Assembly: GCF_031769215.1 (NCBI RefSeq)
Contig: NW_026782555.1
Coordinates: 186,001-250,000 of the forward strand
DNA: 64,000 nt
Direction: 5' to 3'
Source of the DNA: Ylistrum balloti
Taxonomy: Eukaryota
Shown: in pieces, positions 13,500-54,000 of the stretch
Position numbering within the stretch: the stretch's first letter is position 1
Layout of the letters: every line of letters begins with the position of its first letter
Translations under genes and position numbers: made by a program
The notes under the pieces: generated by a model
What the model saw: only the letters and a program-made list of their open reading frames with translations
Told to the model about the DNA's origin: nothing
Databases searched by the model: none

Positions 13500-14280
13500 A
13501 TTAGTCTCTCAGGATATACCTGAGGGATTACATCTGAAAGGATATATCTGTGGGATATAATCTTGGGTTTTATCCGTGGGATATAATCTCTCAGGGAATA
13601 TTTGAGGGATAGATTCTCTCGGGATATGTCTATGGGATATAGTCTCTGAGGATATATATGAGGAATAACATCTCTCAGAATATGTATATCTGTGGGATAT
13701 AATCTCTCAGGATATATCTGTGGGATATAGTCTCTCAGGATATATCTGTGGGATATAATCTCTCAGGATATATCTGTGGGATATAATCTCTCAGGATGTA
13801 TCTGTGGGATATAGTCTCTCAGGATATATCTGTGGGATATAATCTCTCAGGATATATCTGTGGGATATAGTCTCTCAGGATATATCTGTGGGATATAATC
13901 TCTCAGGATATATCTGTGGGATATAATCTCTCAGGATATATCTGTGGGATATAATCTCTCAGGATATATCTGTGGGATATAATCTCTCAGGATATATATG
14001 AGGGATAACGTCTCTTAGGATTTATCTGAGGGATATAGTCTCTCAGGATATATCTGTGGGATATAGTCTCTCAGGATATATCTGTGGGATATAATCTCTC
14101 AGGATATATCTGTGGGATATAGTCTCTCAGGATATATCTGTGGGATATAATCTCTCATCTGTGGGATATAGTCTCTCAGGATATATCTGTGGGATATAGT
14201 CTCTCAGGATATATATGAGGGATAACGTCTCTCAGGATTTATCTGAGGGATATAGTCTCTCAGGATATATCTGAGTGATG
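13500..14280. repeat. 28-bp minisatellite (gggatataatctctcaggatatatctgt), itself made of two related half-units
   Basis: Roughly 25 tandem copies are directly visible. Confidence 0.95.
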
Positions 14281-15799: not shown

Positions 15800-18700
15800 C
15801 TACGCCTCTGTGAGGTCGTCATTGAAGTACAAATGGATGGCTTGTAGGAATGTGTCGTCATTCATGCTGAGTTTGTAGAATTCCTCATCCTCGTCTGGGA
15901 TCTGGTTATCTTCCAATGTTTGGGTCATGTCCAGATTTCTGCCATCATATTTCCATGTGTAGCTTGCCGCGTGGGCATTATATTTAATGTAACGGTCTAA
16001 AATTTCTGTCATTATCTCTTCTGAACACACCTGTGGATATAAAAAGTATAATCCAATTAAACCTGGTAGTTTTTTTTTAACAAACCCGTATATAAAATAC
16101 CTGTTACCTATTATACCTGGTGATTTTTAAAGGAATGAGTGACTATGTCATGTTTACAAATAAGAGTTCATAAAAGTGATATGACATGCATGTATAAGAC
16201 TTGAGGCGAATTTTATTTATCATATAATGAGTTTATTCAATGCAATACATTTGTTTATATGGCAAAACAGGTCAGCATTATGATAAAGCAAAATTTTGAA
16301 ATAAACTTTAATAATTATATCAAATTCCTCATAGCGATTTTAGTAAAAGAGTACAAGAATGCAAAATTTTGCTAGCTCATCCTGGAAATTGAAATAATCA
16401 AAACTTTTTCAACATGTGAAGTTTCAAAGAAATATTTCTCTATCACATACCACAGTCTTACCTCTATAACTTGTTCTTGTGATGTTAAAGTGTTGATTAT
16501 TTTGATGGATCTTGTTTTCTTTGACAATATTCCTACGAGATATCCTTCGTCTTTCCACCATGGCCGACCAAAGTCATTTGCCCAAAAGCTGTCTGGATAT
16601 GGAGGAGGGATGTGAACAAATCGGCCATTTGGACAATAGGGGATCACACAACCTGTCAGAGGATCAACATGGGTACGGATCTGAAAGTACAAGAGTTGAA
16701 AAATATAAAAAGACATGTATACACTGCTGTAGTTTTCTTAGTTATATTAAAGTACTACATTTGTACATAACAATTTGCAGCAAAACATCAGCCTTGAGAT
16801 GTAAAGCTTGCTCAGGTCTTGATAATGGAATTATCCAGGTCATTCCTCAAGGTTTTAATCAGGAAAAGTTAATTGGAACACTGAAGGAGACAGAAACTAT
16901 AACCTTGTCTATATACTATACCTGCTTATTTAAATGAAGTATCTGTAAATACCAATCACTACCTAGCAGAATGACGTTGACCAGATGTTGTGCATTGTAT
17001 AACATTATTTCAACCAAAGAAGCAGAGAAAAAACCTCATCCAATATGTGACAAATGGCCAAACCAGATAAATACTCATCCAATGTCACAAATGACCAGAT
17101 CAGATAAATTCTCACAAACAACCAGACAAAATCAGTCCTCCCTCAATGCTACAAGCAACCAGATGAGAAAAACCCTCACCCTACATTACTAATAAACCAG
17201 ATGAGATAAATCCTCACCTGACATTGCAAACAACCACACAAGATAAATCCTCACCAGACATTAAATTTGGAATTTAACCCATACAAAATTGATGTACTTC
17301 AAAAGACCAGACTAGATAAATTCTCCCCCAATGTTATAAACAACTAGACCAGATAAATCCACTCTGACGTTACAAACATCCATGAAAACCAGATAAAACA
17401 TCCCTTGATATTGACTTTTACATTTAATCCAAGCAAAATACATTAAAAATATTTCACTTATATTATTTCATATTGATTCTAATGATGTGTATCTGACTTA
17501 CAAACTAATATCACTACAACTTGTGTCAATGTTTTCTAACCAATACAAATATATTAGCACTCCTGAAAAGCGATGAAAAATAGAGGACATCCATTTCAAT
17601 GATAAATCTATCATATCCTTAGTCATGCTTACATCTTTGAGTTTAGGATTAAACCAGTGTGAGATGTCTTTTCCTGCTGACTGGATGATTGGTTTTAGGA
17701 GGACATCACCTGGAGAAAACAAAGTGGTAGTTAATCACAGGATATAAAGATTTTATTAATGTTTCCTGTTTGCAGTGATGAGATCAGTAACACTCCAAAA
17801 TGTACTTCCTTGAATTAACCCCATCATGTGTAATGTCATTCATAAAAACATTTATTAGATGTGAGGAAACTATCAGAAATGTGAACAAGGAAGTTGAAAG
17901 TGCAAAACTTTTTGATGCAATTTGAAAATAATTCATTCAATTCTGGTTTCTAGTGTAATTTTTTTATTCGAGATGAGGTCATATGGTGCACTGTGCTGGT
18001 TTCTAGTTTTATTTGTGAGGTAGGGTGAAACATATGGTGAACAATTTTGATTTCAATTTTATTTTTTATTCGGGTGATGTCATATGGTGTTAATTTCTGG
18101 TGTCTGGTGTTATTTGTGAGTAGGGGAAAGGTCATATAATGCACACTTCTGGTTTTAAGTTTTATTCTTGACACATTAAAGATCTCCTTTTTGGCCACGT
18201 CAAATAAAACTAAAAAAGACTTGTCTTGTACTTGAAAAAAAGGGGGAAATATGATTTCTGTTAGGTACATTGTCAAAGAGGCCAAAGGTCCATATGAAAA
18301 TAAAAGACATCAATGACAGATTATAGGAAACTTCAGGTAATCATCAATATGATAGCCCCAACTCATTTAGGAAAAGAGACTGTCTTGTCCCCCTCAAATC
18401 TGTACAAGACTCAATTTATAGAGAGCATAAACATGTATAATCTGAAGTGATCTAAACGTTTCTTTCTGTTTGGGTTGGGGTGGGGATGGGGGCTTGGTCG
18501 GAACCTAAATAAAACCGCAGAGAGATAGTCAGTATAGAGTGTATTGTCCTTGCAACAGCAAGGGTCATATGAGGATGGAGTTGCGTGTGAGAGTGTATTA
18601 TTTTTTAATGTTACACATAAAAGAAATACCTACAAGACTGGTGGACAGTGCTAAAGGTTATGTTTTTGTGAGGCCTTGGGTCTGCGAGTGTATGTTCGGT

Positions 18701-19162
18701 GATTGTGCATACTAAAGTTGGATATCTGGATGGATCAGCTATTTGAGTGTATGCCATGTTCATCAAACAGTGAAACGTTTTATCAGAATACGATCGACAT
18801 GATCTGGTGCCCTGTCATAATGTTACTTATTTTGCACAAGATTTTGTTTATGAATTCACATCAGAGGCACTGAGTAGCTAATCATCTATGTTTGCGTGGA
18901 ATATAACATACAGGGAAATTACGTATCTAAAGGATACAAAGCGAGAGAAGTAGACATCTGGTTAGTGAATAAAGAGGCATAGCAGGTTGCAAGAGTCAAT
19001 GCTACGTGTCGATTCGATGAACGGTGTGATTACAAACTTACCTTTGTATTTTTCACATAGTGGAGTTAGATCATACACTTTTCCTAGGAAAGATACCCAA
19101 AGGTCATCTACAGTGTTGTGTACAGCAACTTCAGAGGGTGTGAAATACTTCGGCCGACCCAT
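15800..19162 (-). CDS. CYB5D1: Cytochrome b5 domain-containing protein 1, 215 aa; exons 19162-19042, 17709-17633, 16680-16462, 16030-15800
   Basis: [35 protein letters not shown] (b5-like fold), [40 protein letters not shown], and C-terminal [12 protein letters not shown]-type ending ([12 protein letters not shown]). Exons sum to 648 nt with GT-AG boundaries in phase. Confidence 0.96.
17000..17400. repeat. Old, loose tandem repeat (~40 bp, aaaccagataaat.ctca core) in CYB5D1 intron 2
   Basis: Recurring aaccagataaat / accagatgagataaatcctcacc motifs. Confidence 0.6.
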
Positions 19163-19453
19163 TTCGGTGTATCGACCATTCGAACTACGGGAAATCAACT
19201 GTTGCCAATGTCAACTAATCAACACCGGAAGTAAAAGTAAAGTGCGAACTGAAGTTTAAGCGGACAATGTACGCATTCAGTTAATAAAGCATGCAATTTG
19301 AAAGGTATATGATAATTCTTTTTAGTTATATTCTACTTCCTATTATTTTAGTTTGATTTCATTATTCAAAATATGACTTCTTAACAAATATAAAATATCG
19401 TTTTGTTCCGTTTGTCATTGACAGATCCGTAATATTGGTGTCGTAAAACCAAG
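19163..19453. promoter_or_regulatory. Compact bidirectional promoter between CYB5D1 and NAA38
   Basis: 291 bp separate the divergent ATGs. An ETS-like ccggaagt lies at ~19226-19233 and a YY1-like aagatggcgg covers the NAA38 start codon. Confidence 0.7.
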
Positions 19454-21744
19454 ATGGCGGGGGAGGTGAGGAAACGGTTTTGAAAAAAACTAACAAAACT
19501 TACCTACGAGCTCTCGTTGTAGTTATTTGCCCAAAACAATTCGAACTGTTACGATATATGTTATTGCTTATCATGATCGACTCATTTATTGAATTTGAAG
19601 AGTTAGGTCATTTATGAGGATGGAGTAATGACATGTCAATGATTCAAAACTTACCCCCGATGGGGTTCGAGCTAGCGACCCTTCGGTCTCTAGCCTGACA
19701 CTCTTAGCTAGACTACATGGAAATTTCCATTATATGATGCTAGTAAGGCGACCTGTACTCTCAACTTCTTCACTACCTCCAATTCCTTCTGGGATTCCTT
19801 TTAGGGACTCGTTTATATCGGACGTTTGACTATATTCCTCATTGGATATTGCCAAACTTCCGATATAAATGATGAATCCCAGAAGGGTTTCACTACTCCC
19901 ACCTTCAAATTCTTTGAATCCGAAGACGACAATATACCAGGTTTAACATCTCCATGGAAGTATTTCGATATTTAATAGTTTCTACCCATGGAGTGGCCAA
20001 CGTCCCCAAATCTGTAATGGGAAGGAATAATGAAACACACCTGCCACTGCTAGGGTTCGAACTAGCAACCCTTCGGTCTCTAGCTGGACACTACTGCTCG
20101 TCTAAAGTGAAATTCCCTTCAACGAGGACCTGTAAACTTAACTACAAGATAACCATGTAGTACTATGTCCCATCCCATCTTTTTTTTTATGGAAATCAAA
20201 AACTATGTATGTCATTATCACTATCTATATTTCGATGTTGAAGTATTTAGAAACATGCACACACTTTTTTGTATGATGTTTGTAGCATTATTTAAAATTC
20301 ATAGGATCAAGATGCGGAAAAGTCCGAAGGGATGAAGAAATTGGAGAAGTGGCTAAACAAAGGCATGAAAATACAAATGACTGATGGTCGGACACTTATT
20401 GGTAGGTCTTCAATAGAATGAGTAACAAAATATACAATATATAGTATGTAGTAGTCACAATTGCTTAATTTCTAAGTTGGTTCATCAAACTTGAAACCTA
20501 AGTTGGCTGTTGTAATTTTGTAACAATAACCTTTGAAGAAAAGAAAAAATATTTAGGATGTCCTTCTAATTTGGGTACATTTTTGATGCAGACAGCACAT
20601 TCTATCCATGTCAGTTTATTACAATTATATAGCTGTCTTTTTTTCATTTAAATGGGCTCTATAAATATTATATACATTTGTTTATGGGTGAATTTTGAAG
20701 CAATTTTACTTGTGTTGTATTGGTTTTCCTCATTTTCTTTCTCTAGGTGTATTTCTATGTACTGACAGAGACAGAAATGTAATATTGGGTTCCTGTGAGG
20801 AGTACCTGCGATCACCAGGTAATGAATTAATCCACTCATGGAAACTTGCATAAATGGATGAATATCATTTAAGGTTACAGTCTCCAGATCACACGCAACA
20901 AAATCAATAATAATATTTTCTTATAACTTTAATTATCAATTATAAAATGAGTTGTCCATGACAAACATCTGATTATCCAAGATTTTATGTTGACATCTCT
21001 TTGTAATCATGAGTGCAGTAAATTTAAGTCTCAGCGGAGTAGTAATTGTAAGGTTATGTCTTTTGAATCTGAAACATGTCAAATAAGACGCCTATAGATA
21101 GTAGCTGTTCAGAATTAATATATTACAGTATACTTTGCATGCTATTAATTTTTAACTGTGGTTCATATTGTAAAGCACATATATTACTGTAAAAGTATTT
21201 CAATATATATTAGATACGGACAAAGATGTAAAATCAGACCTGCATACTTACCTAACTTATGATATTCGTTAGATCAAGCTTGTCCATATTGTAGGTATAG
21301 ATTTGTGCGAGTATATGTCAATACAGAGACAGTTTAAATACAAAAGTTTGAGCATTGTTATAAAAAATGTTTTATTGGTGTTGACTATATATCTAGTCAA
21401 AGTCCATTAGAACACTTAGTCAGAGCCCAGGATAATGTGTTGTGTAAAAATCCATGTGATGATACTATTGACAGTTTGATGAAGAATTTAATAGTTTGTA
21501 TCATTTTAATTATTATTGATAAAACATTTTCAATTTCATCTATTTTTACAGAAAGAACCAATACCTATCATATTTTTATGTACATATATACAAATCAAGA
21601 TTCAATCAAATTTTCAATTTTGAATTTGAAGACAGTGGAAAGAAAGAAGATCCGAGAATTCTTGGATTGGCCATGATCCCTGGCTATCACATTGTCAGCA
21701 TCCATGTGGACGAGGAACACACTCCTGGGCAAAGTGTCATGTGA
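19454..21744 (+). CDS. NAA38: N-alpha-acetyltransferase 38, NatC auxiliary subunit (LSM domain; LSMD1), 97 aa; exons 19454-19465, 20305-20401, 20747-20818, 21632-21744
   Basis: MAGE-DQDAEKSEGMKKLEKWLNKGMKIQMTDGRTLIG-VFLCTDRDRNVILGSCEEYLRSP-DSGKKEDPRILGLAMIPGYHIVSIHVDEEHTPGQSVM*. Sm1/Sm2 motifs match the NAA38 type (MTDGRTL.G.FLCTDRD.NVILGS; PR.LGLAM.PG.HIVSI). Total 294 nt, in phase. Not in the ORF track. Confidence 0.95.
19650..20140 (-). mobile_element. tRNA-derived SINE-like element, two tRNA-like heads in tandem in NAA38 intron 1
   Basis: Minus-strand B-box-like gctcgaacccc (~19665) and gttcgaacccta (~20055), each preceded by gtgtc..gctagagaccgaaggg. The intervening body is homologous to 58085-58415. 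Confidence 0.7.
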
Positions 21745-22149
21745 TTCTGTCTTGTGACAGTCTGCAGGACTTCCTGCCAAATGACTCGCTACAATACATC
21801 ATCATATGACTTCCTGTCATGTGATTGGCTGCCATACATCATCATGTGGCTGAACTGAGTTTACTAGATATATGTAGATAAGTTCATGTGTGGACCTAAT
21901 CAGACAATGTACAATATTTCTGATGGGATTTTTAACGGTATGAATATTGACATAAAAAATAGTTGATATTGACTGTTATGAACGATTCAAAAAGAATACC
22001 AAGGATTTACTATGGTCACCTATTATTGAGACTGAATTCTGTTTGTGAATCAGATCAGAAGTCTTCATTAGAAATGAAATGTGATCTGTTCAGAAATGAA
22101 ATATGGTGGTCATGCTTGTTTGCCATTAATTAATTTGTACCCATATTTA

Positions 22150-24560: not shown

Positions 24561-25447
24561 TATTGCTGTAGAATGGACAACCTTACTCCTTCTAAAATGA
24601 CATGTTCTTCATATCCGGAAGTTGATTCTTCTGATAGCTTATTTTTGATATCCCGTTTTCGTTATCAAGCAGGAATTACGAATCAATCACCATCAATAAA
24701 ATTGGCATTGATGAAAATAACATATTAGAAAAAGTCACTGGAATCAGATATATGTACGTATGACACATACAGAAAAGTAAAGATTAATAAAGGAATTGCC
24801 TTCGGTATTTTTATTTCCGCTTTATATCAAGACAATCATTTGTAAGACTTTGTATTGTAATAACCAATTCACAAAAAAGTTGATTAATTTAATCAATATA
24901 ATGTATCATTGTCACATCAAAAACGCACTACATTGACTTAACAGTATAATTTTATTAATTATAAAAATAAATAATAGGAGATATATATTTATCTTGGATT
25001 AAAGAACTTTAAAAACATTCATATAAATAACAAAGAGAAAGTACAACTAGAAATATTCTGAATCATAAAACGATTTTCGGTGTAATACTTTTTAGTTCCA
25101 CTGGACATTGTATGTCTGAAGTTGTCTGAATATGAACCGATAACACATAACGTTACTATTGACGGTAACCTTGATCTTTCCTATAATGACAATTTGAGAA
25201 ATAAAGAAAATTTATGAAAATTCCTTTCCCATTAATCTATTGATATTTACATGTAAATCAATGTTTTGAAATATTAATACAGGACACAGCTCGTCTTAAC
25301 TCTTTAAATATTTTCCTCCGTAAGTTTTGTACTGTACATTGTGTTTACTCATCAGCAATAATTTGGCTTTCAGGTTTTATCGTTCCAAAAGAGATTTGTA
25401 CAATTTCAACATTACGTAATTTTGATGGAACATCGCACCGACTCGTT

Positions 25448-28400
25448 TTAACCTAACATTCCCATGATACCACCTAAGTCCATTCCACCGCCCCCTCCTC
25501 CTCCTCCCCCTCCCATCAAGCCTCCAAGCATATCCTGAAGCCCGCCTCCATCTTCGCCCATAAGTCCTCCGAGCATGTCCTGCAGGCCTCCGCCACCATC
25601 CCCCATTAATTCTCCGAGCATGTTCCCTATTCCACCAGCGTCTCCGCCTCCAAGTGATCCTAACATTCCGGACACTTGATTCATAACACCTGGGTCATTT
25701 AGGAGATTTTGTACATTACCTGCATCTATTTTACCATCACTCCCGAGGACACTTGACAAATCGGGCAATCCCCCACCACCACCACCACCACCACCACTCG
25801 AACTTCCTCCAAAGAGGTCACCGAGTCCTCCGCCATTGCCGTTCAACAGGCCATTCAGGTCTAATCCACCACCAGATGAACTGTCGCCATTGAGGAGGTT
25901 ATCCAATGCACCACCTGAAGGGAAACCACTGCCACCGCCAGATGGCGGAGGTGGTGCAGGGTCTTGAATGTTGTTTGCTGGTTGCATAGGCATGACTCCT
26001 GCAGGACCAGTATTCCCACCAAGGCCAAATCCACCACCCGATAGGTTTGGATCGGGTTGGCTGTTACTATTTGGTTGCTGGAAACCATTTTGGTTTGACT
26101 GATCTGGGTTGCTAAATTGAAAATTAAACGCGTTCTGTTGTCCGCCATTGTCAACTTGATTTCCAGAGGGTGGTCCTTGATTTCCCCACGGATTACCGCC
26201 AGGTCCCGAGGGCTGCGCCGGACTCCCTTGGTTACTCCACTGATTTCCGTTTGGTCCTTGATTTCCTTGGTTACCCCACTGATTTCCACCGGATCCCTGG
26301 TTACCCCACTGATTGCCGTTAGATCCTTGGGTTGCCTGGTTACCCCACTGATTACCGTTAAATCCTTGGTTTCCTTGATTACCCCACTGATTTCCACCGG
26401 ATCCCTGGCTACCCCACTGATTGCCGTTAGATCCTTGGTTTCCTTGATTACCCCACTGGTTACCGTTAGGTCCTTGGTTTCCCTGGTTACCCCACTGATT
26501 ACCGTTTGATCCTTGGTTACCCCACTGATTTCCGTTATATCCCGGCTGATTACCCCATTGATTTCCGTTCTGTTGCCACTGGTTACCCCACTGATTACCA
26601 TTTTGTTGACCTTGTGAATAGTAAGGGCCCTGCTGGTATTGCTGTTGTGGATACTGTTGTTGCTGGGGATAATATCCTCCCTGTTGATATTGCTGGTTCT
26701 GGCCCTGGTTCGACCACTGGGAGGAGGCGCTATTGGACCGACCGCCGGACCCACTTGAGCCTCCAAGCATGCCCATCACCTGAGAGAGTGCGTTATTCAG
26801 ACCAGCGTTAGGTCCTGGCTGGGCTCTTGTACCTTGAGAATTTTCCAACAGCTCCGGTCTTGGCCTGCTTGAATCCCCTCCTCCTGATGGATCTGATATT
26901 CCAAGCATACTCATGAGACTTCCACCGCCTCCTGCTCCTCCCCCTATACTTGATCCTGGTGACGATCCTCCCATATTTTGCAGCATTGACGATATACCTG
27001 CCATAGCGCCAGGGTTACCCAGAATGCTTGCTAATGGGTTACCACCAGATGACGCTCCGCTCCCTCCTCCCAATCCCATCATTCCTTGGCCACCTCCAAG
27101 CATACCTTGGGAAGATCCTCCCATCATGCCTTGCTGTCCGGAAAACATGCCTCCTTGCATACCCGCGTAGCCTCCATACATATCATCGTCATCTCTGCTG
27201 CTACCTCCTCCAAGGATAGACGAAAGTAGCCCTCCCCCTCCACCGCCTCCTCCCCCTCCGAGCATACCGGACAACATCTTACCGGCTCCGAGCATTGGAA
27301 TCAAACTAGTAAGTCCACCCAGACCACCGCCTCCTCCTCCTCCTCCACCAAGCATGCTGGATAGAAGTCCACCGCCGCCACCTCCGATCATGCTCGAAAT
27401 AAGACCGCCGCTTCCCCCGCCTCCACCGCCTCCAAGGACGCTTCCTGCTAGACTGGCCAATCCGCCTAAGCCTCCACTGTCGCTGCTGCCTCCTCCCATA
27501 AGGCCCTTCACTGTATTTAGAATGCTAGGGTTCTTGACAAGTCCAGTGACCTTCGATAGCAATCCTTCATCTCCGTCAGCCACCTCTTCTATTTTGTTGT
27601 TAACGTTGGTTGATGGTGGTGGGGGCGTGGTAGGTGGAGGCGCAGTGGTGGTGGCGCTAACTGTCGCGCCACCAGTAGCGCCACCAGTAGCACCACCTGT
27701 GGCGCTGCTCGTCCCAGTATTGGCCGTTAAGGAAGAGGTTATTCCCGCTAAGTCATCCTCCATGACCTTCACCTCTAAAATGGCCAATAACTGTTCTGCC
27801 TTGTCACTCCCGAACTCCTTCGCCAGCTGGGCAAGAAGATCACTTTTGGCGGGAGAGTCTTTAATTTCTAAAACGATTAAGATAAACAAATTAAACGGCA
27901 ATAAAAACTGTAAACTTGGGTCATTTTGACGTTCAATCTATAAAGAAATTATTCTGGAGGTACAGAAGCAATATGTATTTCTTTGTCTGATTTGTTGGAT
28001 CGCATTTGTTACGGGTTTCATCAATGTCGTAACTCGCAAACGATGATATGTCTTATCACACCAAGTTCATGACTAGAATTTAAAGGGGCAAAAACTAAGA
28101 AATGATCTCATATCTTAGTAACGTCAGCCCATATTCATTTATTTATTTACTAACTTAATTCAATCAAAGGGCGATTTCCATTTTCACTGTGTTTGTTAAC
28201 TATGTTAAATGTATATCACAAGGTACTCGGTATTTCAAATTGGTTACAAATAATAAGACTTACGATCTATCATCAAAGGTTTTGATTGGACACTTTCCCA
28301 GTATTCGTCATATGTACGGACAATAGAACCTCTGTAATGAAAGGTTGGGATGAGTAATCCAAAACTCATTAAGAGATATAATACAGAAAGAAAAGTTCAA

Positions 28401-31400
28401 ATACTGATAAATTATGGAAATCAATAAAGAAAATAATGACAATGCAAGTCAGTCGAATCTTAGTTCAGGCTCAACTCGATGAAACAAAAGAACAAGAGAA
28501 ACATTTAAAAAGGAGACCATCAAAACTTAAAATTCAATAGAAACATTAACGAATTAACTCCACTTCTGTTTTCTTCAACCATGATCAGGACTCTTTATAG
28601 AATATAAAATAAAAACAATATGAAGCGTAAATTTGATTGATTATTTCAGCACCGTTGAAGTAAGATGAATACATACCTAACAACCAGATTGTCCTCTAAA
28701 TCCTTGAATTCGGTTGGCGCGTGCCATATCATTGTAATGTTTCCTTTCCAGCGACTGTTCGCGTGACTGATGCTGTCGCCGTCCACCATTTGACACCGGA
28801 AGGGGCGTGCCATACCGTCCGCTGTCCACGTCCCGCGCGGAAAGTCGAACAAACTCTTCTCGGGAACAACTTGTAAGAAGAACCCTTTGAAGGCATCTTG
28901 TCTCGTCTTTGGTGAAATTGTCACTGTTGAAAGAGAAACGTTTCGTTATTTTCAGTATCGGGAAAGACGAAAAATTGACTTGGTAGCGTCCAAACAATGA
29001 TCGAGATTCGCATGGATTTGCTTAGACACTTAAAGATATCAATGACTCAGGAATGAAAGAATAATTACATTTCCCATTGTAATATTGTTTGTTTCCCAGT
29101 ACACTGTAAAATGAACTCTATGTATCCCGGCAAACATAGACGGGTAATACTGATGAAACTCTCGAACGCAGTTCTAGAACACAAGTGTTGTTACTTCTAA
29201 CGCGGTTATGAAACACGACAAAGGTGATATTTCTAACGCGATTATGAAACACGACACATGTGCTACTTCTAACGCTGTAACGCGGGTATAAAACACGACA
29301 AATGTGTTACTTCTAAAGCTGGTATAAAACACGACAAATGTGCTACTTCTAACGCTGTTATAAAACACGACAAATGTGCTACTTCTAACGCGGTTATAAA
29401 ACACGACAAATGTGCTACTTCTGACGCGGTTATGAAACACGACAAATGTGTTACTTCTAACGCGGTTACAGAACACGACAAATGTGCTACATCTAACGCG
29501 GTTACAGAACACGACAAATGTCTCGCACAATATGTACGCCAGTGCTTGTACGCTCCACACTGATTAAAGTGGCTTTGTAGTCATCGAAGCTTCACACTTA
29601 AATCTTCTACGTGTTGTGAAGTAAGAACTTCTATTCTATTGGTTGACCGATTTATACTCAGAATTGGACGAAATGATTAAAAATGTAACAATATATACGT
29701 CACGTGATTACCACAACACTTGTCACATTTCTGCTGAGAAGAATTTTTCCTTAACCAAGACAAGTAAATACATTAGGGATTTAAAGAGAAATTGGGTCGA
29801 TTCTATCAAACGTGTTATTACAATAGTTCCGTTACCAAAACACGGTCGTGTGATAAAACGAATATTGATATTGGAGCTATATAGTGATATATTTTCTGTT
29901 TCTAAAAGGGCCTACAAAATGATACCAATCGATTGAGAAAGGTATACTTATTTTTATCCTACTCTACTTTTGCCAGAAAAGTGAAAATTAATCAGGCTTA
30001 ATATGCATCATTCACACGCCAGTTTCAATGTTACCAAAGAGATATTTGTTTGTGATCTTAAACAATGTTTGAATATCATGTTCATGGCAATATCTTCATG
30101 TTTTGAAATGACCCCAAATGCGACGGAATCGCTACCGATGATGAATAATTAATTTTAATCAAACTTTTAAAAAATGGTATAAAACAGCACGATGTGTAGG
30201 GAATGTAAATGCTATAGTTGCCTGAACAAACTTTGGCATTTATAACGGCTATAAGTGACATAGCAACATAGCGAATGTTTACGAGTTATTTGTACTTCAA
30301 CTGGTCATCACAGTTCGGAGGTCGTCCGAGGTAAAATTGAACAGTCATAGTATGATATACAAACAAGCCGCAGGGTACGCAGTTAGCACGTATCGTGTCG
30401 GCAAGCTTCACAGCCGAAGGCCCCGCGTAATCGATGACGTCATCGTTAATGAAAACCTCGAGATATTGAACAAATCATGAAACAAGGCAGTTAAAAGAAT
30501 ACTCTGACGAGTATATTCTCTTTTTGGCGCGAATTTATTCGTGATAGAAAGTAATCTGAATTCTATATTTGGATGGCACTGGTATTTTAGATCTTCAATA
30601 ATAAAGATACTGCTAAAATTTGAAGTTTGATTTTGTCACTTATACAAAACGACTGAAGGCAAAGTTGAAAAAATAATTTGTAAATATCCGTAAAATAGAA
30701 TGAAATAACAGGTCAGAGATAAGGGGCGTGTTTAGTTATTATGGGTGTTTGGAATGAAATATGACTCATAGGTCATCGTGTGAACATGGCAAAGGAAGTC
30801 AGGACAAGCACCGGTCATCTACACTCGTCTTAAGTCACTCCTGACCACAAGTTTTGACAAACATGCGCCCAATCGACGTCATGATAAGTCAGTGAAAATT
30901 CTTGCCCACGAGAAGTGACACACACTCAATCGACGTCATGATAAGTCAGTGAAAATTCTTGCCCACGAGAAAAGAGACACACTCACCGACTTCATGATAA
31001 GTCATTGTAATTCTCTGTCAACGGGAGTGAGACACACTCACCGACTCCATGATAAGTCAGTGTAACGTCATGTCAAAGTGAAATGAGACACACTCACCGA
31101 CTCCATGAGAAAAGTCAGTGTAACGTCATGTCAAAGTGAAATGAGACACACTCACCGACTCCATGAGAAAAGTCAGTGTAACGTCATGTCAAAGTGAAAT
31201 GAGACACACTCACCGACTCCATGAGAAAAGTCAGTGTAACGCCATGTCAAAGTGAAATGAGACACACTCACCGACTCCATGAGAAAAGTCAGTGTAACGT
31301 CATGTCAAATTGAAATGAGACACACTCACCGACTCCATGATAAGTCAGTGTAACCCCCTGTCTAAGAGAAATGAGACACACTCACCGACTTCATGATAAA

Positions 31401-32716
31401 AGTCAGTGTAACTCCCTGTCCTCGAGAAGTGAGACACACTCACCGACATCATGATAAAGGTTAGTGTAACGTCATGTGACGACATACATCAGTATGATGT
31501 CGATGTAATGTGACGACATACATCAGTAATGGTAAGAGAAATGTACATAATCACGACATCCATGATAAGTCATGTAATTCGTCGATGTACATGTGACGAC
31601 ATACATCAGTATGATGTCAAAGTAATGTGACACATACATCAGTATGGTGTCGTCATGTAATATGACGACACACATCAGTATGGTGTAAGAGAAATGACGA
31701 CATAATCAGTCCATGATGTCGATGTAATGTAAGAGACGACATACATCAGTATGATGTCTATGTAATGTGACGACATGAGACACATCAGTATGGTGTCGAT
31801 GTAATGTGACGACATGAGACACATCAGACTTCATGATAAAAGTCAGTGTAATATGACGACATATATCATCATGATGTCAGATGTAATGTGACGACATACA
31901 CAGTATGGTGTCATGATAAGTCAGTGTAACTCATACATCGAGAAATAGACACATGACTTCATGATAAAAGTCATGTAATGTGACACATACATCATGATAA
32001 GTCAGTGTAACGTGATGTCTATGTAATGTGACGACATACATCAGTATGGTGTCGATGTAATGTGACGACATACATCAGTATGGTGTCGATGTAATGTGAC
32101 GACATACATCAGTATGATGTCGATGTAATGTGACGACATACATCAGTATGATGTCTATGTAATGTGACGACATACATCAGTATGGTGTCGATGTAATGTG
32201 ACGACATACATCAGTATGATGTCGATGTAATGTGACGACATTCATCAGTATGGTGTCGATGTAATCTGACGGTATATGTAAGTATGGTGTCTATGTAATG
32301 TGACGACATACATCAATATGCTGGATCTCTATAGAACTTAGTGATTCTTTTGTGTAATGTTTTTAAACCGTGAAAACACCTGAAATGAATTAGATATGGT
32401 TCTCCTGAAATATTTAGGTATAGTCAAGAAATACATAATAATTTTCAAAATAATTAATTATATTCTTCCTGTTGGAGAAAGTCCCGTACTAACCTTCCAC
32501 AGCATCACCAGGCTTTATAACTGTAGTATTTGTTAATATACGAAACGGTGGCGTCGAAAATTGAGGAGCATATTCCCAATTCCAGTCAGTAAAATTTCTC
32601 CGTATATGGTATGGTTTCTTTAAATTACATCCTTTTCTGGGTACTCCGGTACTGTATGATTCCACAGTGGCTAGAGCACACGCCACCAGAACTAAACACA
32701 CACAAAACTTATCCAT
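25448..32716 (-). CDS. Secreted Reeler-domain protein with a very long low-complexity tail, 985 aa; exons 32716-32494, 28923-28677, 28331-28264, 27867-25448
   Basis: Signal peptide MDKFCVCLVLVACALATVES, then a Reeler domain (YSTGVP..GC; PPFRI; VTISP; FKGFFLQ; ISHANSRWKGNITMIWHAP; GSIVRTYDEYW). This is spliced in phase (1,2,1) onto the 2.4-kb Gly/Met/Leu/Gln/Asn-rich exon. Total 2958 nt ending in TAA at 25448-25450. Confidence 0.88.
29185..29520. repeat. 36-bp minisatellite (ataaaacacgacaaatgtgctacttctaacgcggtt) in intron 1 of the Reeler gene
   Basis: About 9 tandem copies; they explain the 12-aa periodic ORFs 29174..29560 and 29269..29517. Confidence 0.95.
30865..31460. repeat. 56-58-bp minisatellite (gagacacactcaccgactccatgagaaaagtcagtgtaacgtcatgtcaaagtgaaat)
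   Basis: Tandem units, e.g. starting at 31085, 31143 and 31201. Confidence 0.93.
31470..32320. repeat. 34-bp minisatellite (gatgtaatgtgacgacatacatcagtatggtgtc), scrambled with the 58-bp unit between ~31470 and 32030
   Basis: Clean copies at 32030-32310; a mosaic of both units upstream. Confidence 0.9.
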
Positions 32717-33689
32717 ACTCGTTCACAATGCTGTCTTTTTGTCAAAATCCGTTGTATTTCCACATTTGCCTTTAGTCGAGGACCAGCCCCGACTTTTCAA
32801 TATCACTATATACTACTCTCTTACCAGCATCTGTTAAACAGTGCACAGGCTATATAAATTTCATACAGTTCCGGGTAACCCAAGGGGGCTCATCGCCAGT
32901 AAGTTGGCACATATTTGTACAGTCATCAATTGAAATCAGCTTTCTTAATGATTCCTGGAGAGATATGTCTGATGTTAAATACCTTTTCGTTTTTCATAGA
33001 AATTAATTAACAAATAATTTTCAAGAACAGAAAACGAAAGTATATATTTTTGTTAACATTAGTCTTATTTTTTTTTAAATTTTGGTTTCCCCATTAGCGC
33101 CTCGGATTCCACCCGCCTTTAGTTTGATGGATGATGAGTGACAAGTAATACACGGTACCGGGTGACTTTACTTCCGCCTTCGGGTGACGTCGGTACATAT
33201 AGTGGACCGCCACCACGGTCTCGGGATTATCAGAGTGACGTATACACCGTGGGATGGTAGCTGTACGCATCTATGGGAAGTCTGAAGCCCTTATTTTTTA
33301 GCTCCTCGAACAGTTGATACAAATTTACATCTCCAATCGAAATTTTTTATAGAAATCCATGCAATTTTCAAACTTGTAAAAAATGTGTGATCTCTTGACT
33401 TTTTCATGAGATTTTATGAAACAAGTCTCGAAGTTAATATTATTTTTTTGCTCGCCTTATCATATAAAATGAAAACAAATCTAAGATACTGTTCATCATA
33501 TAACCCGAAAAAGTTAAATTTTGACAGATTTTAGTAAAAACGTGGCGGTTCAGTTTATGACGTAATTTAATTGTCCATATCATCACGTTAAGATCTATTT
33601 CCAACAGGCGTAGCCAATGAAAAACGAAAGTTTTAAGGTTATTAAACTAGTGACCTACGTAAAAACATTCCGAAGTCTCAATAGTGTGC

Positions 33690-51000: not shown

Positions 51001-54000
51001 GCTACGTCTTTTCAAGTAATATTAATACTCAACTGATGAATCTCATAGTTTTACAACTGTGGTTAATGTTGATAATGTAATGAGTTATTACCCTACAGTA
51101 AATCCTGTCATCAAGATGTAATGTACGGCTCTTTTATTTTGCGGGTGTTTAATTCTGCGACTCTTTTTGAAACTTATTCAGGGGGATTCAATTTCACAAA
51201 TCATATTACTGTTTTTTCTAGTATACCTATCAGCATTTCAGAACACTTTACGAAGATCTAAAATATTCATGAGGTATAAAATATATCAATGTTAAATGAC
51301 CACTTTATCATACCTGTTTGTAAAGGAAAGGAACTTTCTGGTTTTAATTATTTATAGACTCCTAAAGACAAGAACTTGATTGAGATGTCTGGATGTAAGG
51401 CTACAGCTGTCAGGACGTCAGATGACACAGTACATTGTACACATGATGCCATATACAATGAAGGTAAAGAAGGTTTAAAAGTCATATTGAAACAAGCACG
51501 GTCAAAAACATCAATAACTGAACATAATTTTGGTCAGAAAAGGTAAAAATGTCAAATTTTGGTAAATTCTATGAATATGTATTTCATGTTTAAAAATGCA
51601 TAATTATTTAAATACTGGTATTGCTACCTCTTATTTCTATGGTGCTTACAAACTGTTAAGTAAAATAGACCTGGAAATATGGTATAGTCAGATAAAAAAG
51701 AAAAAGAATTAAGTTTTAGTAGTCTTTAGTACTCTTTAGTTTGCTTAAAATTGACCATATTGACAAAGATGGATAGGACAGACAACACATACAGTGTAAT
51801 TGTACATATGTTTATTTTACAATAAATCTTGACACAAAGTAGGCACTGGGTTTATTGTATCGATGAAGCTTTAGTTAGCTGATCTGATCCGTAGGGTCAA
51901 ATAACCTATAGCCATCCTGTTTCAGCTTTCATTGTACATTGTCCCTAACATTTTAAATGCAACTTCTACTCAAGTTTTTTTTTTTAAATGCTGATAGTGA
52001 TATAAAAAATTAACCGTCTAATTCAAAAGCATTTTATTTCTCAGGATTTGAACTTCCGACCGTGAACTATGACCTATACAACGGTCGTCAGTATCGTTAC
52101 AGCTATGGATTCAGCGTACAAAGTGAAAAAACTGTTGCTGTAAGTACCCATAGTTTTGTGTCAGTAAAGACAAAAGTTTGTAGATATAACAAAGTGGTGA
52201 TATATTCTGGAGGTTTAACTGTTGGTGCCTGGGATGGCTGTGGGTTTGGGAGGTTTGGCTGGGAGGTGCTTGGGATGGTTGCAGGTTTGGGAGGTTTGGC
52301 TGGTAGGTGCCTGGGATGGCTGTAGGTTTTGGAGGTTTGGCTGGTAGGTGCCTGGGATGGTGTAGATTTGGGAGGTTTGACTGGTAGCTGCCTGGGATGA
52401 CTGTAGGTTTGGGAGGTTTGGCTGGGAGGTGCCTTGAATGGTTGCAGGTTTGGGAGGTTTGGCTGATAGGTGCCTGCGATGGTTGCAGGTTTTGGAGGTT
52501 TGGCTGGTAGATGCCTGGGATGGCTGTAGGTTTGGGAGGTTTGGCTGGTAGGTGCCTGGGATGGCTGTAGGTTTTGGAGGTTTGGCTGGTAGGTGCCTGG
52601 GATGGTGTAGATTTTGGAGGTTTGGCTGGGAGGTGCCTTGAATGGTTGCAGGTTTGGGAGGTTTGGCTGATAGGTGCCTGCGATGGTTGCAGGTTTTGGA
52701 GGTTTGGCTGGTAGATGCCTGGGATGGCTGTAGGTTTGGGATGTTTGGCTGATTGGTGCCTGGGATGGCTGTAGGTTTGGGAGGTTTGGCTGGTAGGTGC
52801 CTGGGATGGCTGTAGGTTTTGGAGGTTTGGCTGGTAGGTGCCTGGGATGGTGTAGATTTTGGAGGTTTGGCTGGTAGGTGCCTGGGATGGCTGTAGGTTT
52901 TGGAGGTTTGGCTGGTAGGTGCCTGGGATGGTGTAGATTTTGGAGGTTTGGCTGGTAGGTGCCTGGGATGGTGTAGATTTTGGAAGTTTGGCTGGTAGGT
53001 GCCTGGGATGGTTGCAGGTTTGGAAGGTTTGGCTGGTAGGTGCCTGGGATGGTTGCAGGTTTGGAAGGTTTGGCTGGTAGGTGCCTTGAATGGTTGCAGG
53101 TTTTGGAGGTTTGGCTGGAGGTACCTGGGATGGCTGTAGGTTAGGGATGTTTGGCTGGTAGGTGCCTGGGATTACTGTAGGTTTGGGAGGTTTGGCTGGT
53201 AGGTGCCTGTGATGGTTGCTGGTGTGGGAGGTTTGGCTGGTAGGTGCCTGTGATGGTTGCTGGTGTGGGAGATTTTGCTGGTAGGTGCTTTGTATGGCAA
53301 TATGAAATGAAAAATGATTTAAGATCCTTGTGCAGTATAACTTCTTATTTCTAATATCTGTGTAAAGGTATATTGGGTAAGAAAATGATGAATATTATCT
53401 AGATACCTCTTTCAAACTTATAATGCTATATAGTTGGGAGTATATTTATCTCACTCTAATATAATCGGAGGTAGTGATAAAACAAAATGGATGTCTACTT
53501 TGGTTGACAGTTGGTGAAGGTAGACCTCCCCAATAAAACATCTCTTCAGTGGGACTGTGAAGGGTGTGTGCCATCAGAACCAATCTTTGTGGCCGATCCA
53601 GACGGAACTGAGGAAGATGATGGTAGGTTGGACTGTTGACCATGTTAAATGTGAAAGTTACAAAAGTAAAAAGGATGTTTGACATTTTGCTTGTGCAAAT
53701 CTTAGTGCCCTATAGTATCATAATGTACCATAAAATTTTATTTTCCAATTTTTTTTTGTGTGTGTGAAGGACAAAGGATCCTGCAAGGCTGCCATCAATG
53801 ATTGTTGAGATTATTTTGTACACAAAACTAACACAAAAAGGATTTGACGATTTACGTTCGAACAACAATAATGAATGAAATAATTACTTTATATATTATG
53901 CAAACTATCTGAGTACTTGTAGACATCATCCAAAATCAGGACGAATGGTTTAAAACATGATAGCAACTAGCAAGACAAGAAACTGCTGTTCCCAGTTTGA

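What the first reader, a model, noticed from the sequence alone, without database searches (positions are those of the whole stretch)
25448..32716. Unusual architecture: signal peptide, Reeler domain and an ~800-aa block-copolymer low-complexity tail
Seen: three small exons give a complete secreted Reeler domain. It splices in frame to one 2.4-kb exon with ordered blocks: a short helical linker, a Thr/Pro stalk (TTTAPPPTTPPPP), poly-Gly with amphipathic GGLLSSMLGG/Met motifs, an acidic RDDDD, a Gln/Tyr block, NQWG repeats, a Pro/Asn/Gln block and a terminal Gly/Asp/Met/Leu block (GGLQDMLGGLMG). The tail has no Cys and very little Lys or Arg. Established: Reeler domains usually occur alone (insect defense proteins) or with spondin, DOMON or cytochrome b561 modules, and Gly/Met-rich blocks typify molluscan structural proteins such as scallop abductin. 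Inference: a possibly undescribed self-assembling extracellular material protein (shell matrix, ligament, byssus, adhesive or mucus) with a folded binding head.
Basis: partly seen in the sequence, partly recalled or inferred. Interest (0 to 1): 0.8.

Follow-up and report, generated by a model that had tools for sequence, protein, structure and literature searches.

The report
Secreted Reeler protein, giant disordered tail
This is a real, intact bivalve gene for a secreted protein with a small folded Reeler head and an 805-residue glycine-rich disordered tail; oysters and mussels share the tail's block order, and "Reeler head plus disordered tail" is already known from snail shell-matrix proteins, but this long-tailed bivalve branch is unstudied.

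Summary
On the minus strand, four phase-compatible GT-AG exons (32716-32494, 28923-28677, 28331-28264, 27867-25448) encode a signal peptide, a complete Reeler domain and an 805-residue low-complexity tail. The tail is 29% Gly, has no Cys or His, and has 16 Lys+Arg.

I found no scallop RNA. The head-to-tail join is supported independently by gene models in Ostrea edulis (XP_048771820.2, 969 aa, misnamed "ARID1B-like"), Saccostrea cucullata (976 aa, "PE-PGRS-like") and Mytilus galloprovincialis. The oyster gene has the same four-exon layout and the same downstream neighbours (LSM, cytochrome b5), so it is an ortholog.

The order of the tail blocks is conserved well beyond composition (z = 7-8 against block shuffles). 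Conserved sequence islands sit at similar spacings in all species.

The architecture class is not new. Gastropod shell matrix protein SMP1 and abalone shell proteins are signal peptide + Reeler + disordered region. What is new is a conserved, 18-fold longer, multi-block tail that nobody has characterised.

The function is inferred, not shown: a secreted matrix scaffold anchored by the Reeler head.

The parts
32494..32716 (-). Exon 1. It holds the ATG, the signal peptide (about residues 1-19, roughly 32660-32716) and the N-terminal third of the Reeler domain, including the first conserved Cys. It ends in phase 1.
   Evidence: Sequence read; hydrophobic core at residues 4-16; BLASTP to oyster P0007 residues 7-72; hhalign to head profile, 97.5%; donor AAG|GTTAGT.
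28677..28923 (-). Exon 2. It holds the core of the Reeler domain, including the invariant Cys, His, Lys and Trp columns. It ends in phase 2.
   Evidence: Pfam PF02014 35.9 bits, profile positions 42-110; BLASTP to P0007 residues 74-146; invariant columns in A3.
28264..28331 (-). Exon 3. It holds the last strand of the Reeler domain (the IV..Y.EYWE motif). It ends in phase 1.
   Evidence: hhalign to head profile columns 138-155, E 1.8e-5; 79% identical exon at the same spacing in relative L002; donor TCG|GTAAGT.
25448..27867 (-). Exon 4. It encodes the 805-residue low-complexity tail plus the stop codon (25448-25450).
   Evidence: ORF; acceptor TTTTAG behind a pyrimidine tract; composition; alignments A1 and A2 to oyster and mussel tails.
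27716..27853 (-). Conserved helical linker (tail residues 5-50), with the motif LL.QLA.E.G.D.A..LL..L..KV.E.D.
   Evidence: AF2 helices 5-18 and 20-50, pLDDT 71-87; 56% identity over 32 residues to oyster; 60% identity to Mytilus proteins.
27608..27715 (-). Thr/Ala/Gly/Pro stalk (tail residues 51-86). This is a candidate O-glycosylated spacer, and it is longer in the scallop than in oysters.
   Evidence: Sequence blocks; it appears as a gap in the oyster rows of A1; pLDDT below 50.
27500..27607 (-). Second helical island (tail residues 87-122), ending in the conserved KNPSIL..VK motif.
   Evidence: AF2 helices 87-96, 100-110 and 113-122, pLDDT 80-85; V119 and K120 invariant in the 4-way alignment.
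26918..27499 (-). Gly/Ser/Leu/Met block (tail residues 123-316): poly-Gly runs separated by short aliphatic motifs (three G[LIM][LIM]SS[LIM][LIM]GG units), plus the acidic RDDDD patch.
   Evidence: The block between the VK and RPEL anchors is 221 aa in the scallop, 245 and 228 aa in the oysters and 227 aa in the mussel. Another individual carries an in-frame +6 nt (two extra Gly) at 27329.
26816..26917 (-). Conserved non-repetitive island (tail residues 317-350): L..MLGI.DP ... PRPEL.E..Q..RAQP.
   Evidence: Invariant columns L317, L321, G322, D325, P326, P335, R336, E338, L339, E341, A348 and P350 across scallop, two oysters and mussel.
26216..26719 (-). Gln/Tyr block followed by the NQWGNQG repeat array (tail residues 383-550; 12 NQW units).
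   Evidence: At DNA level there are tandem repeats of period 39 and 108 bp at 26224-26542. Oysters and the mussel have Q/N/G blocks here built from different repeat units.
25916..26215 (-). Pro/Asn/Gln/Gly block (tail residues 551-650).
   Evidence: the equivalent P/N-rich block sits at the same place in oysters.
25451..25915 (-). C-terminal Gly/Leu/Met/Asp module (tail residues 651-805). It holds the conserved PDLS..LG and MNQV.GM islands, two GGLQDMLGGLMG units, and a terminal poly-Gly followed by LGG.MGMLG.
   Evidence: Invariant D702, L703, G726, M728, G733, M734, the G785-G792 run, L797, G798 and G805; AF2 weak helices at 715-781, pLDDT 50-66; PDL-to-end length 105, 95, 95 and 128 aa in the four species.
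24951..24956 (-). AATAAA, a candidate polyadenylation signal about 490 nt after the stop codon. This is inferred only.
   Evidence: Sequence read; no RNA data are available.

Best explanation
It encodes a secreted protein of about 985 residues: signal peptide, one Reeler domain with its conserved Cys pair, a conserved alpha-helical linker, and an 805-residue tail that is mostly disordered.

The tail is built of ordered blocks:
- a Thr/Pro stalk;
- poly-Gly with short Leu/Met/Ser motifs;
- a conserved PRPEL...RAQP island;
- Gln/Asn/Gly repeats with Trp and Tyr;
- a Pro/Asn block;
- a Gly/Leu/Met/Asp end module.

The gene is the scallop ortholog of Ostrea edulis XP_048771820.2. It belongs to a family present in scallops, oysters and mussels (Pteriomorphia).

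Shown here: the gene structure, the domain, orthology, microsynteny, and conservation of block order and block lengths.

Inferred: it works like the known molluscan Reeler + disordered-region matrix proteins such as gastropod SMP1. The folded Reeler head would anchor the molecule to an extracellular partner, probably a polysaccharide such as chitin or a glycosaminoglycan. That guess rests on what is known of other Reeler domains. The tail would self-associate into an insoluble gel or scaffold. Aliphatic Leu/Met stickers in Gly spacers, and aromatic Trp/Tyr/Phe stickers in Gln/Asn/Gly spacers, would drive the association. The likely site is an organic matrix secreted by the mantle (shell, periostracum or ligament).

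My confidence by part: gene model and family about 0.9; extracellular self-assembling matrix role about 0.55; shell matrix specifically about 0.35.
For: Gene model:
- Canonical splice sites and compatible phases.
- An ORF of 817 codons, P about 1e-19 by chance.
- Pfam Reeler on exon 2; exons 1 and 3 fit the head profile.
- A DNA run of another individual shows one synonymous, one non-synonymous and one in-frame +6 nt change in the part of exon 4 covered (27000-27867) and one synonymous change in exon 3, against many changes in the introns.

Head joined to tail in other species:
- Ostrea P0007 and Saccostrea P0022 carry a Reeler domain (80 bits) plus a collinear tail.
- Mytilus P0011 joins Reeler, linker and the Gly/Met block.
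- Mytilus proteins hit exon 1, exon 2 and the start of exon 4 in order.

Orthology:
- The oyster locus L001 has the same four-exon layout.
- The LSM and cytochrome-b5 genes lie downstream in the same order and orientation.

Tail under constraint:
- Global alignment score is 808 against 404 +/- 50 for 25-aa block shuffles (z 8.1, oyster), and 747 against 472 +/- 39 (z 7.1, mussel).
- The anchor islands are spaced 221/245/228/227 aa, 366/343/360/451 aa and 105/95/95/128 aa in scallop, the two oysters and mussel.

Disorder: AF2 gives pLDDT below 50 for 647 of 805 residues, with confident helices only at 5-50 and 87-122.

Known class and analogy:
- Signal peptide + Reeler + disordered-region shell matrix proteins are described in Crepidula. 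CfSMP1 is the most differentially expressed shell matrix protein of the adult mantle, and its expression during development is confined to the shell gland / shell field (PMC9365450, PMC11401363, PMC12277549).
- The same architecture is found in abalone nacre (PMC6003135).
- Met-rich low-complexity regions typify the insoluble scaffold proteins of Pinctada nacre, prisms and ligament (PMC7591529).
Against: - There is no RNA, tissue or proteomic evidence for the scallop gene, so the exon 3 to exon 4 join rests on phase, splice signals and orthologs' predicted models.
- No ligand of the head was tested. The head model was too poor to compare folds.
- Literature searches found no bivalve shell, byssus or ligament proteome naming this protein.
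- Gastropod SMP1 was reported as gastropod-restricted (PMC12277549), so the resemblance may be convergent addition of a tail to a Reeler head rather than orthology.
- AF2 disorder was called on an alignment of only 3 sequences.
- Only two full-length models were found in a 5.8-billion-protein collection, so the family's spread is poorly sampled.
Confidence: 0.55

Rival explanations
1. Humoral immune factor. As with insect Reeler-only proteins (Noduler type), the head would recognise microbial polysaccharides. The Gly/Leu-rich tail would aggregate around or insert into microbes, giving entrapment or clotting rather than building a material.
For: Reeler-domain proteins are treated as immune genes in insects (PMC3616906, found). 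The conserved helices at tail residues 87-122 are amphipathic and rich in Gly, Leu and Lys. Oysters and mussels keep small Reeler paralogs next to the gene.
Against: An 805-residue tail with conserved block order and lengths and no dibasic processing sites (16 K/R in all) does not look like an antimicrobial-peptide precursor. Molluscan Reeler + disordered-region proteins that have been located are in shell matrix and shell-field cells (PMC12277549, PMC6003135).
Confidence: 0.12
2. Non-mineral secreted gel. The protein would be a component of mucus, the byssus or its adhesive, the larval cement, or the rubbery hinge ligament. It would act as an elastomeric or cohesive hydrogel rather than as a shell matrix scaffold.
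For: The Gly/Met-rich composition recalls elastomeric and ligament proteins of bivalves (LMP and abductin, cited in PMC7591529). The tail has few acidic residues (43 D+E of 805) and no Asp-rich calcium-binding block. It also has a short Thr/Pro stalk of mucin type.
Against: There is no abductin-type FGGMGG repeat and Phe is only 1.2%. Oysters lack a byssus as adults yet keep the gene. No expression data exist either way.
Confidence: 0.25
3. Two genes. The three Reeler exons would make a small secreted Reeler protein (read-through of the exon 3 donor stops after 8 codons), and the 2.4-kb ORF would be a separate low-complexity gene. The apparent fusion would be an artefact of gene prediction in all species.
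For: There is no scallop RNA. The orthologs' models are computational predictions. M. edulis models end soon after the linker.
Against: - The large ORF has no signal peptide and no plausible start of its own. Its first in-frame Met follows the linker helix.
- The ORF opens exactly at a strong acceptor in the phase left by exon 3.
- The linker helix that begins exon 4 follows the Reeler domain in three independent annotations.
- The M. edulis truncation coincides with a frame break in that assembly, because M. galloprovincialis reads through.
- Four-exon layout and spacing are conserved between scallop and oyster.
Confidence: 0.05

Closest known systems
Ostrea edulis XP_048771820.2 (969 aa, auto-named 'AT-rich interactive domain-containing protein 1B-like') and Saccostrea cucullata P0022 (976 aa, 'PE-PGRS family protein PE_PGRS54-like')
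   Same: They share the signal peptide, Reeler domain, helical linker, block order, conserved islands and C-terminal module. They also share the four-exon layout and the LSM / cytochrome-b5 neighbours.
   Different: The heads are only about 36% identical. The scallop has a longer Thr/Ala/Gly/Pro stalk. Its Q/N block is built of Trp-containing NQWGNQG units, where oysters have Phe/Pro-containing NNFQQNPN-type units. The oysters carry an extra small Reeler gene just upstream. These proteins are predictions with misleading names and are uncharacterised.
Gastropod shell matrix protein 1 (SMP1; Crepidula fornicata and C. atrasolea)
   Same: It has a signal peptide + Reeler domain + C-terminal Gly/Gln-rich intrinsically disordered region, and it is a secreted molluscan protein (PMC9365450, PMC12277549).
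   Different: CfSMP1 is 275 aa with a 45-aa disordered region, against about 985 aa with an 805-aa multi-block tail here. SMP1 was reported as gastropod-restricted. Orthology to the bivalve family was not tested because no SMP1 sequence was available through the tools. SMP1's shell-field expression and its presence in the shell proteome are shown; nothing comparable is known for this gene.
Abalone (Haliotis laevigata) shell proteins with Reeler + disordered region (Tri_63049 / ML7B12, Tri_61496, Tri_28544)
   Same: They combine a Reeler domain with predicted disordered, compositionally biased regions, and they were recovered from nacre and prismatic matrix (PMC6003135).
   Different: Their bias differs (Thr- or Ser-rich). 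Some also carry DOMON or transmembrane segments. Their sequences were not compared here.
Met-rich insoluble scaffold proteins of Pinctada fucata (NU-5, LMP), MRNP34 and scallop abductin
   Same: They are secreted bivalve matrix proteins with Gly/Met-rich low-complexity regions that aggregate or cross-link (PMC7591529 and the references it cites).
   Different: None of them has a Reeler head. From my own knowledge, abductin is a protein of about 130 aa made of GGFGGMGGGX-type repeats, which are absent here. Met is only 4.3% of this tail, against much higher values in those proteins.
Ferric-chelate reductase 1-like proteins (Reeler-DOMON-cytochrome b561) and small Reeler-only proteins
   Same: They carry a homologous Reeler domain. 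P0008 and P0004 were among the 8 hits of the exhaustive search.
   Different: This protein has no DOMON, no b561 and no membrane span. The canonical AC..M.P.H motif of the head is altered in the long-tail family.

Membership tests
Reeler domain (Pfam PF02014) | Profile match above the curated gathering score | tested here: met
   Exon 2 alone scores 35.9 bits against a cut-off of 21, profile positions 42-110. The oyster ortholog scores 80.3 bits over positions 12-130 of 131.
Reeler domain (Pfam PF02014) | Whole domain present (N-terminal and C-terminal thirds as well) | tested here: met
Tested piecewise. Exon 1 fits head profile columns 3-54 (97.5%). Exon 3 fits columns 138-155 (E 1.8e-5).
Reeler domain (Pfam PF02014) | Conserved Cys pair (N-terminal Cys and mid-domain Cys) and the downstream His, Lys and Trp | tested here: met
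   Cys30 of exon 1 aligns with the Cys of the A/G-C motif. Cys43 of exon 2 falls in the invariant C100 column, with H109, K115 and W122 also invariant.
Reeler domain (Pfam PF02014) | Beta-sandwich fold like solved reeler domains | tested here: inconclusive
   The AF2 model of the oyster head is all-beta (8 strands) but has mean pLDDT 44.6, so no fold search was run. phmmer against PDB sequences found nothing significant.
Pteriomorph long-tail Reeler family (Ostrea XP_048771820.2 type) | Collinear head, helical linker, block order and conserved islands | tested here: met
   Alignments A1 and A2; block-shuffle z 8.1 and 7.1; similar anchor spacings.
Pteriomorph long-tail Reeler family (Ostrea XP_048771820.2 type) | Same exon layout and genomic neighbourhood (orthology) | tested here: met
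   The four exons have the same boundaries in L001. LSM and cytochrome-b5 lie downstream in the same order and orientation.
Molluscan Reeler + disordered-region shell matrix proteins (SMP1-like) | Signal peptide + Reeler + C-terminal Gly/Gln-rich low-complexity region | tested here: met
   The architecture is as published in PMC9365450 and PMC12277549, but the tail here is about 18 times longer.
Molluscan Reeler + disordered-region shell matrix proteins (SMP1-like) | Presence in a shell proteome and/or expression in mantle or shell-field cells | not testable with these tools
   No RNA run holds the locus. No paper in the library names the bivalve protein.
Molluscan Reeler + disordered-region shell matrix proteins (SMP1-like) | Sequence orthology to gastropod SMP1 | not tested
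   No SMP1 sequence was returned by any tool. SMP1 is reported as gastropod-restricted (PMC12277549).
Abductin | Short protein made of Gly/Met/Phe decapeptide repeats (GGFGGMGGGX type; from my own knowledge) | tested here: not met
   No FGGMGG motif, 10 Phe and 35 Met in 805 residues.
Ferric-chelate reductase 1 / SDR2 type (Reeler-DOMON-cytochrome b561) | DOMON and cytochrome b561 domains after the Reeler domain | tested here: not met
   A Pfam scan of exon 4 finds neither. The true member P0008 shows both.

The most novel reading that the evidence does not exclude
The tail is an ancient extracellular 'multi-block sticker-spacer' polymer. Aliphatic Leu/Met stickers in poly-Gly, then aromatic Trp/Tyr/Phe stickers in Gln/Asn/Gly, then a Met-rich helical end module would drive ordered phase separation or gelation outside the cell, tethered by the Reeler head.

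The order and lengths of the blocks have been held since scallops, oysters and mussels diverged, while the repeat units inside each block turned over. That would make it a naturally conserved block copolymer, and a major matrix component that tryptic proteomics has overlooked: only 100 of its 805 tail residues fall in peptides of 7-35 residues.
Probability: 0.25. Interest if true: 0.65.

Novelty: new variant of a known kind. Interest (0 to 1): 0.45.

Why it matters
If the reading holds, this is a tractable case of a disordered protein whose block architecture is conserved over deep time, rather than its sequence. It would give materials scientists a natural design: a folded anchor plus ordered cohesive blocks.

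It also extends the Reeler + disordered-region matrix-protein class from snails to bivalves.

It flags a practical blind spot. A 336-residue stretch of the tail has no Lys or Arg, so standard tryptic shell, ligament and byssus proteomes would miss most of the protein.

It corrects misleading database names ("ARID1B-like", "PE-PGRS-like").

It is not a new kind of system, and nothing about its function has been shown.

Tried and rejected
- RNA evidence. The run search returned one holder, not on record as RNA. Laid on 27000-32800, it covers the introns, so it is DNA and shows no splice joints.
- Word-index protein search with the tail's first 130 residues: no hit.
- Word-index protein search with the 4-way tail alignment: only the oyster and an unrelated Met-rich repeat protein, P0023. 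Candidates were swamped by low complexity.
- The exhaustive search with exon 2 gave only 8 hits and no annotated scallop protein. Either scallop annotations lack this gene or they are not in the library.
- PDB sequence searches with exon 2 and with the oyster head: nothing significant.
- AF2 of the oyster head with 7 sequences had mean pLDDT 44.6, too poor for a fold search, so none was run.
- The Pfam 'New_glue' match on the tail (E 0.54, 10.5 bits against a cut-off of 31) was rejected as noise.
- A second Reeler gene in the window, as in oyster and mussel: none found by tblastn.
- The GC-rich, G-skewed stretch at 52-54 kb was checked as a possible paralogous tail. It is a non-coding 41-bp minisatellite.
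- One literature search with min_terms 2 was too broad and gave nothing useful.
- An STI1/DP-like reading of the C-terminal Met-rich helices was considered from resemblance only. There is no Pfam support, so it is not claimed.

Full report
**What is in the sequence**

The minus strand carries an 817-codon ORF at 25448-27901. It lies in a window of about 35% GC, and its own GC rises to about 52%. The chance of such an open frame is about 1e-19, even with the local base composition.

Reading the minus strand gives four exons:
- E1 32716-32494, starting at the ATG
- E2 28923-28677
- E3 28331-28264
- E4 27867-25448, stop codon included

The donors are AAG|GTTAGT, TAG|GTATGT and TCG|GTAAGT. The acceptors are CAG, CAG and TAG behind pyrimidine tracts. 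The introns are 3570, 345 and 396 nt long. The exons end in phases 1, 2 and 1, so the frame is continuous. The large ORF opens upstream of the acceptor only because the pyrimidine tract happens to be stop-free.

**The head**

Exon 2 alone matches Pfam Reeler (PF02014) at 35.9 bits, against a cut-off of 21, over profile positions 42-110. Exons 1 and 3 are too short for Pfam. I built a head profile from oyster, mussel and other Reeler proteins (A3) and compared each exon with it:
- Exon 1 aligns to columns 3-54 (97.5%, E 6e-12).
- Exon 3 aligns to columns 138-155 (E 1.8e-5).

The two structural Cys and the invariant His, Lys and Trp columns are present. The N-terminus has a hydrophobic core at residues 4-16 followed by small residues, as in a cleaved signal peptide. 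No signal-peptide predictor was available.

All head evidence is exon by exon.

**The tail**

The 805 residues of exon 4 are G 29%, S 11%, Q 9%, N 9%, L 9%, P 6% and M 4%. There are no Cys or His, and only 11 Lys and 5 Arg.

AlphaFold2 on exon 4, with the two oyster tails as its alignment, gives:
- confident helices only at residues 5-50 (pLDDT 71-87) and 87-122 (80-85);
- weak helices at 715-781;
- pLDDT below 50 for 647 of 805 residues.

This fits a mostly disordered chain. The alignment had only three rows, so the call is soft.

**Is the head really joined to the tail?**

I could not get RNA. The run search found one holder. It covers the introns, so it is DNA.

That run is still useful. 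In the part of exon 4 that was laid (27000-27867) it shows one synonymous change, one non-synonymous change (G126D) and one in-frame +6 nt insertion that adds two Gly. Exon 3 has one synonymous change. No change is listed in exons 1 or 2. The introns carry dozens of changes. This is the pattern of a gene under purifying selection. Nine rows of that table were not shown, so the contrast is approximate.

The main support for the join comes from other species. The exhaustive HMMER search with exon 2 returned only 8 proteins. One is a 969-aa Ostrea edulis RefSeq protein, XP_048771820.2, auto-named "AT-rich interactive domain-containing protein 1B-like". It has a signal peptide, a Reeler domain (80 bits), the same helical linker (56% identity over 32 residues) and a tail with the same blocks. 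Saccostrea cucullata has a 976-aa counterpart, named "PE-PGRS54-like".

The Mytilus "Reelin domain-containing" models hit exon 1, exon 2 and the start of exon 4 of the window, in that order. The M. galloprovincialis model runs from Reeler through the linker into the Gly/Met block. In the M. edulis assembly the model breaks where two reading frames overlap. An 806-codon tail ORF follows directly at L003 13977-16397.

**Orthology**

The oyster locus L001 has the same four exons with the same boundaries. tblastx shows the LSM gene and the cytochrome-b5 gene downstream of it in the same order and relative orientation as in the window, at about 20305-21780 and 17630-19165.

A genomic contig from another relative (L002) has exon 2 at 66% identity and exon 3 at 79% identity with the same layout.

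Oyster and mussel each carry a small Reeler gene beside the long one. The scallop window has none.

**Is the tail's order conserved beyond composition?**

Yes. Semi-global alignment of the scallop tail gives these scores:

| Comparison | Real score | Partner shuffled in 25-residue blocks | z |
|---|---|---|---|
| Scallop vs oyster | 808 | 404 +/- 50 | 8.1 |
| Scallop vs mussel | 747 | 472 +/- 39 | 7.1 |

Four conserved islands act as anchors: KNPSIL..VK, PRPEL.E..Q..RAQP, PDLS..LG and MNQV.GM. Their spacings are similar:

| Segment | Scallop | O. edulis | S. cucullata | M. edulis |
|---|---|---|---|---|
| VK to RPEL | 221 | 245 | 228 | 227 |
| RPEL to PDL | 366 | 343 | 360 | 451 |
| PDL to end | 105 | 95 | 95 | 128 |

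Inside the Q/N block the repeat unit differs by lineage. The scallop has NQWGNQG, oysters have NNFQQNPN-like units, and the mussel has NGFNNGMSNSNGQGG-like units. The scallop array is still a DNA-level tandem repeat. So the block type and block size are held while the repeats turn over.

**What it most likely does**

Nothing here shows function. The closest described proteins are molluscan shell matrix proteins with the same architecture on a small scale:
- Crepidula SMP1 has a signal peptide, a Reeler domain and a 45-aa Gly/Gln disordered region. It is the most differentially expressed shell matrix protein of the adult mantle, and during development its expression is confined to the shell gland / shell field (PMC9365450, PMC11401363, PMC12277549).
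- Several abalone nacre and prism proteins are annotated "Reeler, IDR" (PMC6003135).
- Met-rich low-complexity regions are common to the insoluble scaffold proteins of Pinctada nacre, prisms and ligament, and one of them aggregates in vitro (PMC7591529).

On this basis I take the protein to be a secreted matrix scaffold. The Reeler head would act as the anchor. The tail would be a self-associating, largely uncharged polymer.

I hold this at about 0.55, and a location in shell matrix specifically at about 0.35. The rivals are:
- a non-mineral gel, ligament or adhesive role (0.25);
- an immune aggregation role, by analogy with insect Reeler proteins (0.12);
- a two-gene artefact (0.05).

**Novelty**

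The architecture class is published, and orthologs are in RefSeq. No paper in the library deals with the bivalve long-tail protein, and its database names are wrong.

The conserved multi-block tail of about 800 residues is a new variant of the known Reeler + disordered-region kind.

A practical point follows from the composition. Only 6 tryptic peptides, 100 of the 805 residues, fall in the 7-35-residue range, and residues 377-712 have no Lys or Arg at all. Standard proteomes would see little of this protein. CNBr would cut it into 36 pieces.

**Limits**

- There is no RNA evidence for the scallop gene.
- The joined protein was not searched or folded.
- The head model was too poor for fold comparison.
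- Orthology to gastropod SMP1 was not tested.
- The family's taxonomic spread is known from only a handful of models.
I did not check it.

Noticed in passing
window 52209-53288: A G-rich 41-bp minisatellite of 26.5 copies (89% matches) causes the local GC peak and the strong GC skew. No long ORF lies in it, so it is not a second low-complexity exon.
   Followed up: partly
window 29192-29521, 30969-31477, 31579-32320 (intron 1 of the gene): Three minisatellite arrays with periods of 36, 58 and 34/68 bp (about 9-10 copies each) fill much of the 3.6-kb first intron. The DNA run shows depth spikes and gaps there.
   Followed up: no
window about 20305-21780 (+) and about 17630-19165 (-): Exons of an LSM-family gene and a cytochrome-b5-domain gene lie here. 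They are in the same order and orientation relative to the Reeler gene as in Ostrea edulis.
   Followed up: partly
L003 13684-14055 and 13977-16397 (Mytilus edulis CAJPWZ010003335.1): The mussel ortholog is split in this assembly into two overlapping reading frames near 13960-14055. The deposited models (CAG2196341.1, CAG2257938.1) therefore end in out-of-frame residues, whereas the M. galloprovincialis model reads through.
   Followed up: partly
L001 7926-9105 (Ostrea edulis) and L003 428-8420 (Mytilus edulis): A small Reeler-only gene (281 and 290 aa) sits next to the long-tail gene in oyster and mussel. Its first exon ends at the same position in the domain. No such neighbour is in the scallop window.
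   Followed up: partly
window 27329: Another individual carries an in-frame 6-nt insertion (two extra Gly) in a poly-Gly run of the tail. This is a length polymorphism of the coding repeat.
   Followed up: yes
P0023 (579-aa metagenome protein): This unrelated protein has repeats of G.NPMA[DE]I[ML]KGMM flanked by Gly runs. They resemble the SNPLA.L.GGGG repeats of the oyster and mussel tails. The likeness may be convergent Met-rich helical units.
   Followed up: no
window 32851-32856: A TATATA motif lies about 135 nt upstream of the ATG on the minus strand. It is a possible core promoter element, by inference only.
   Followed up: no
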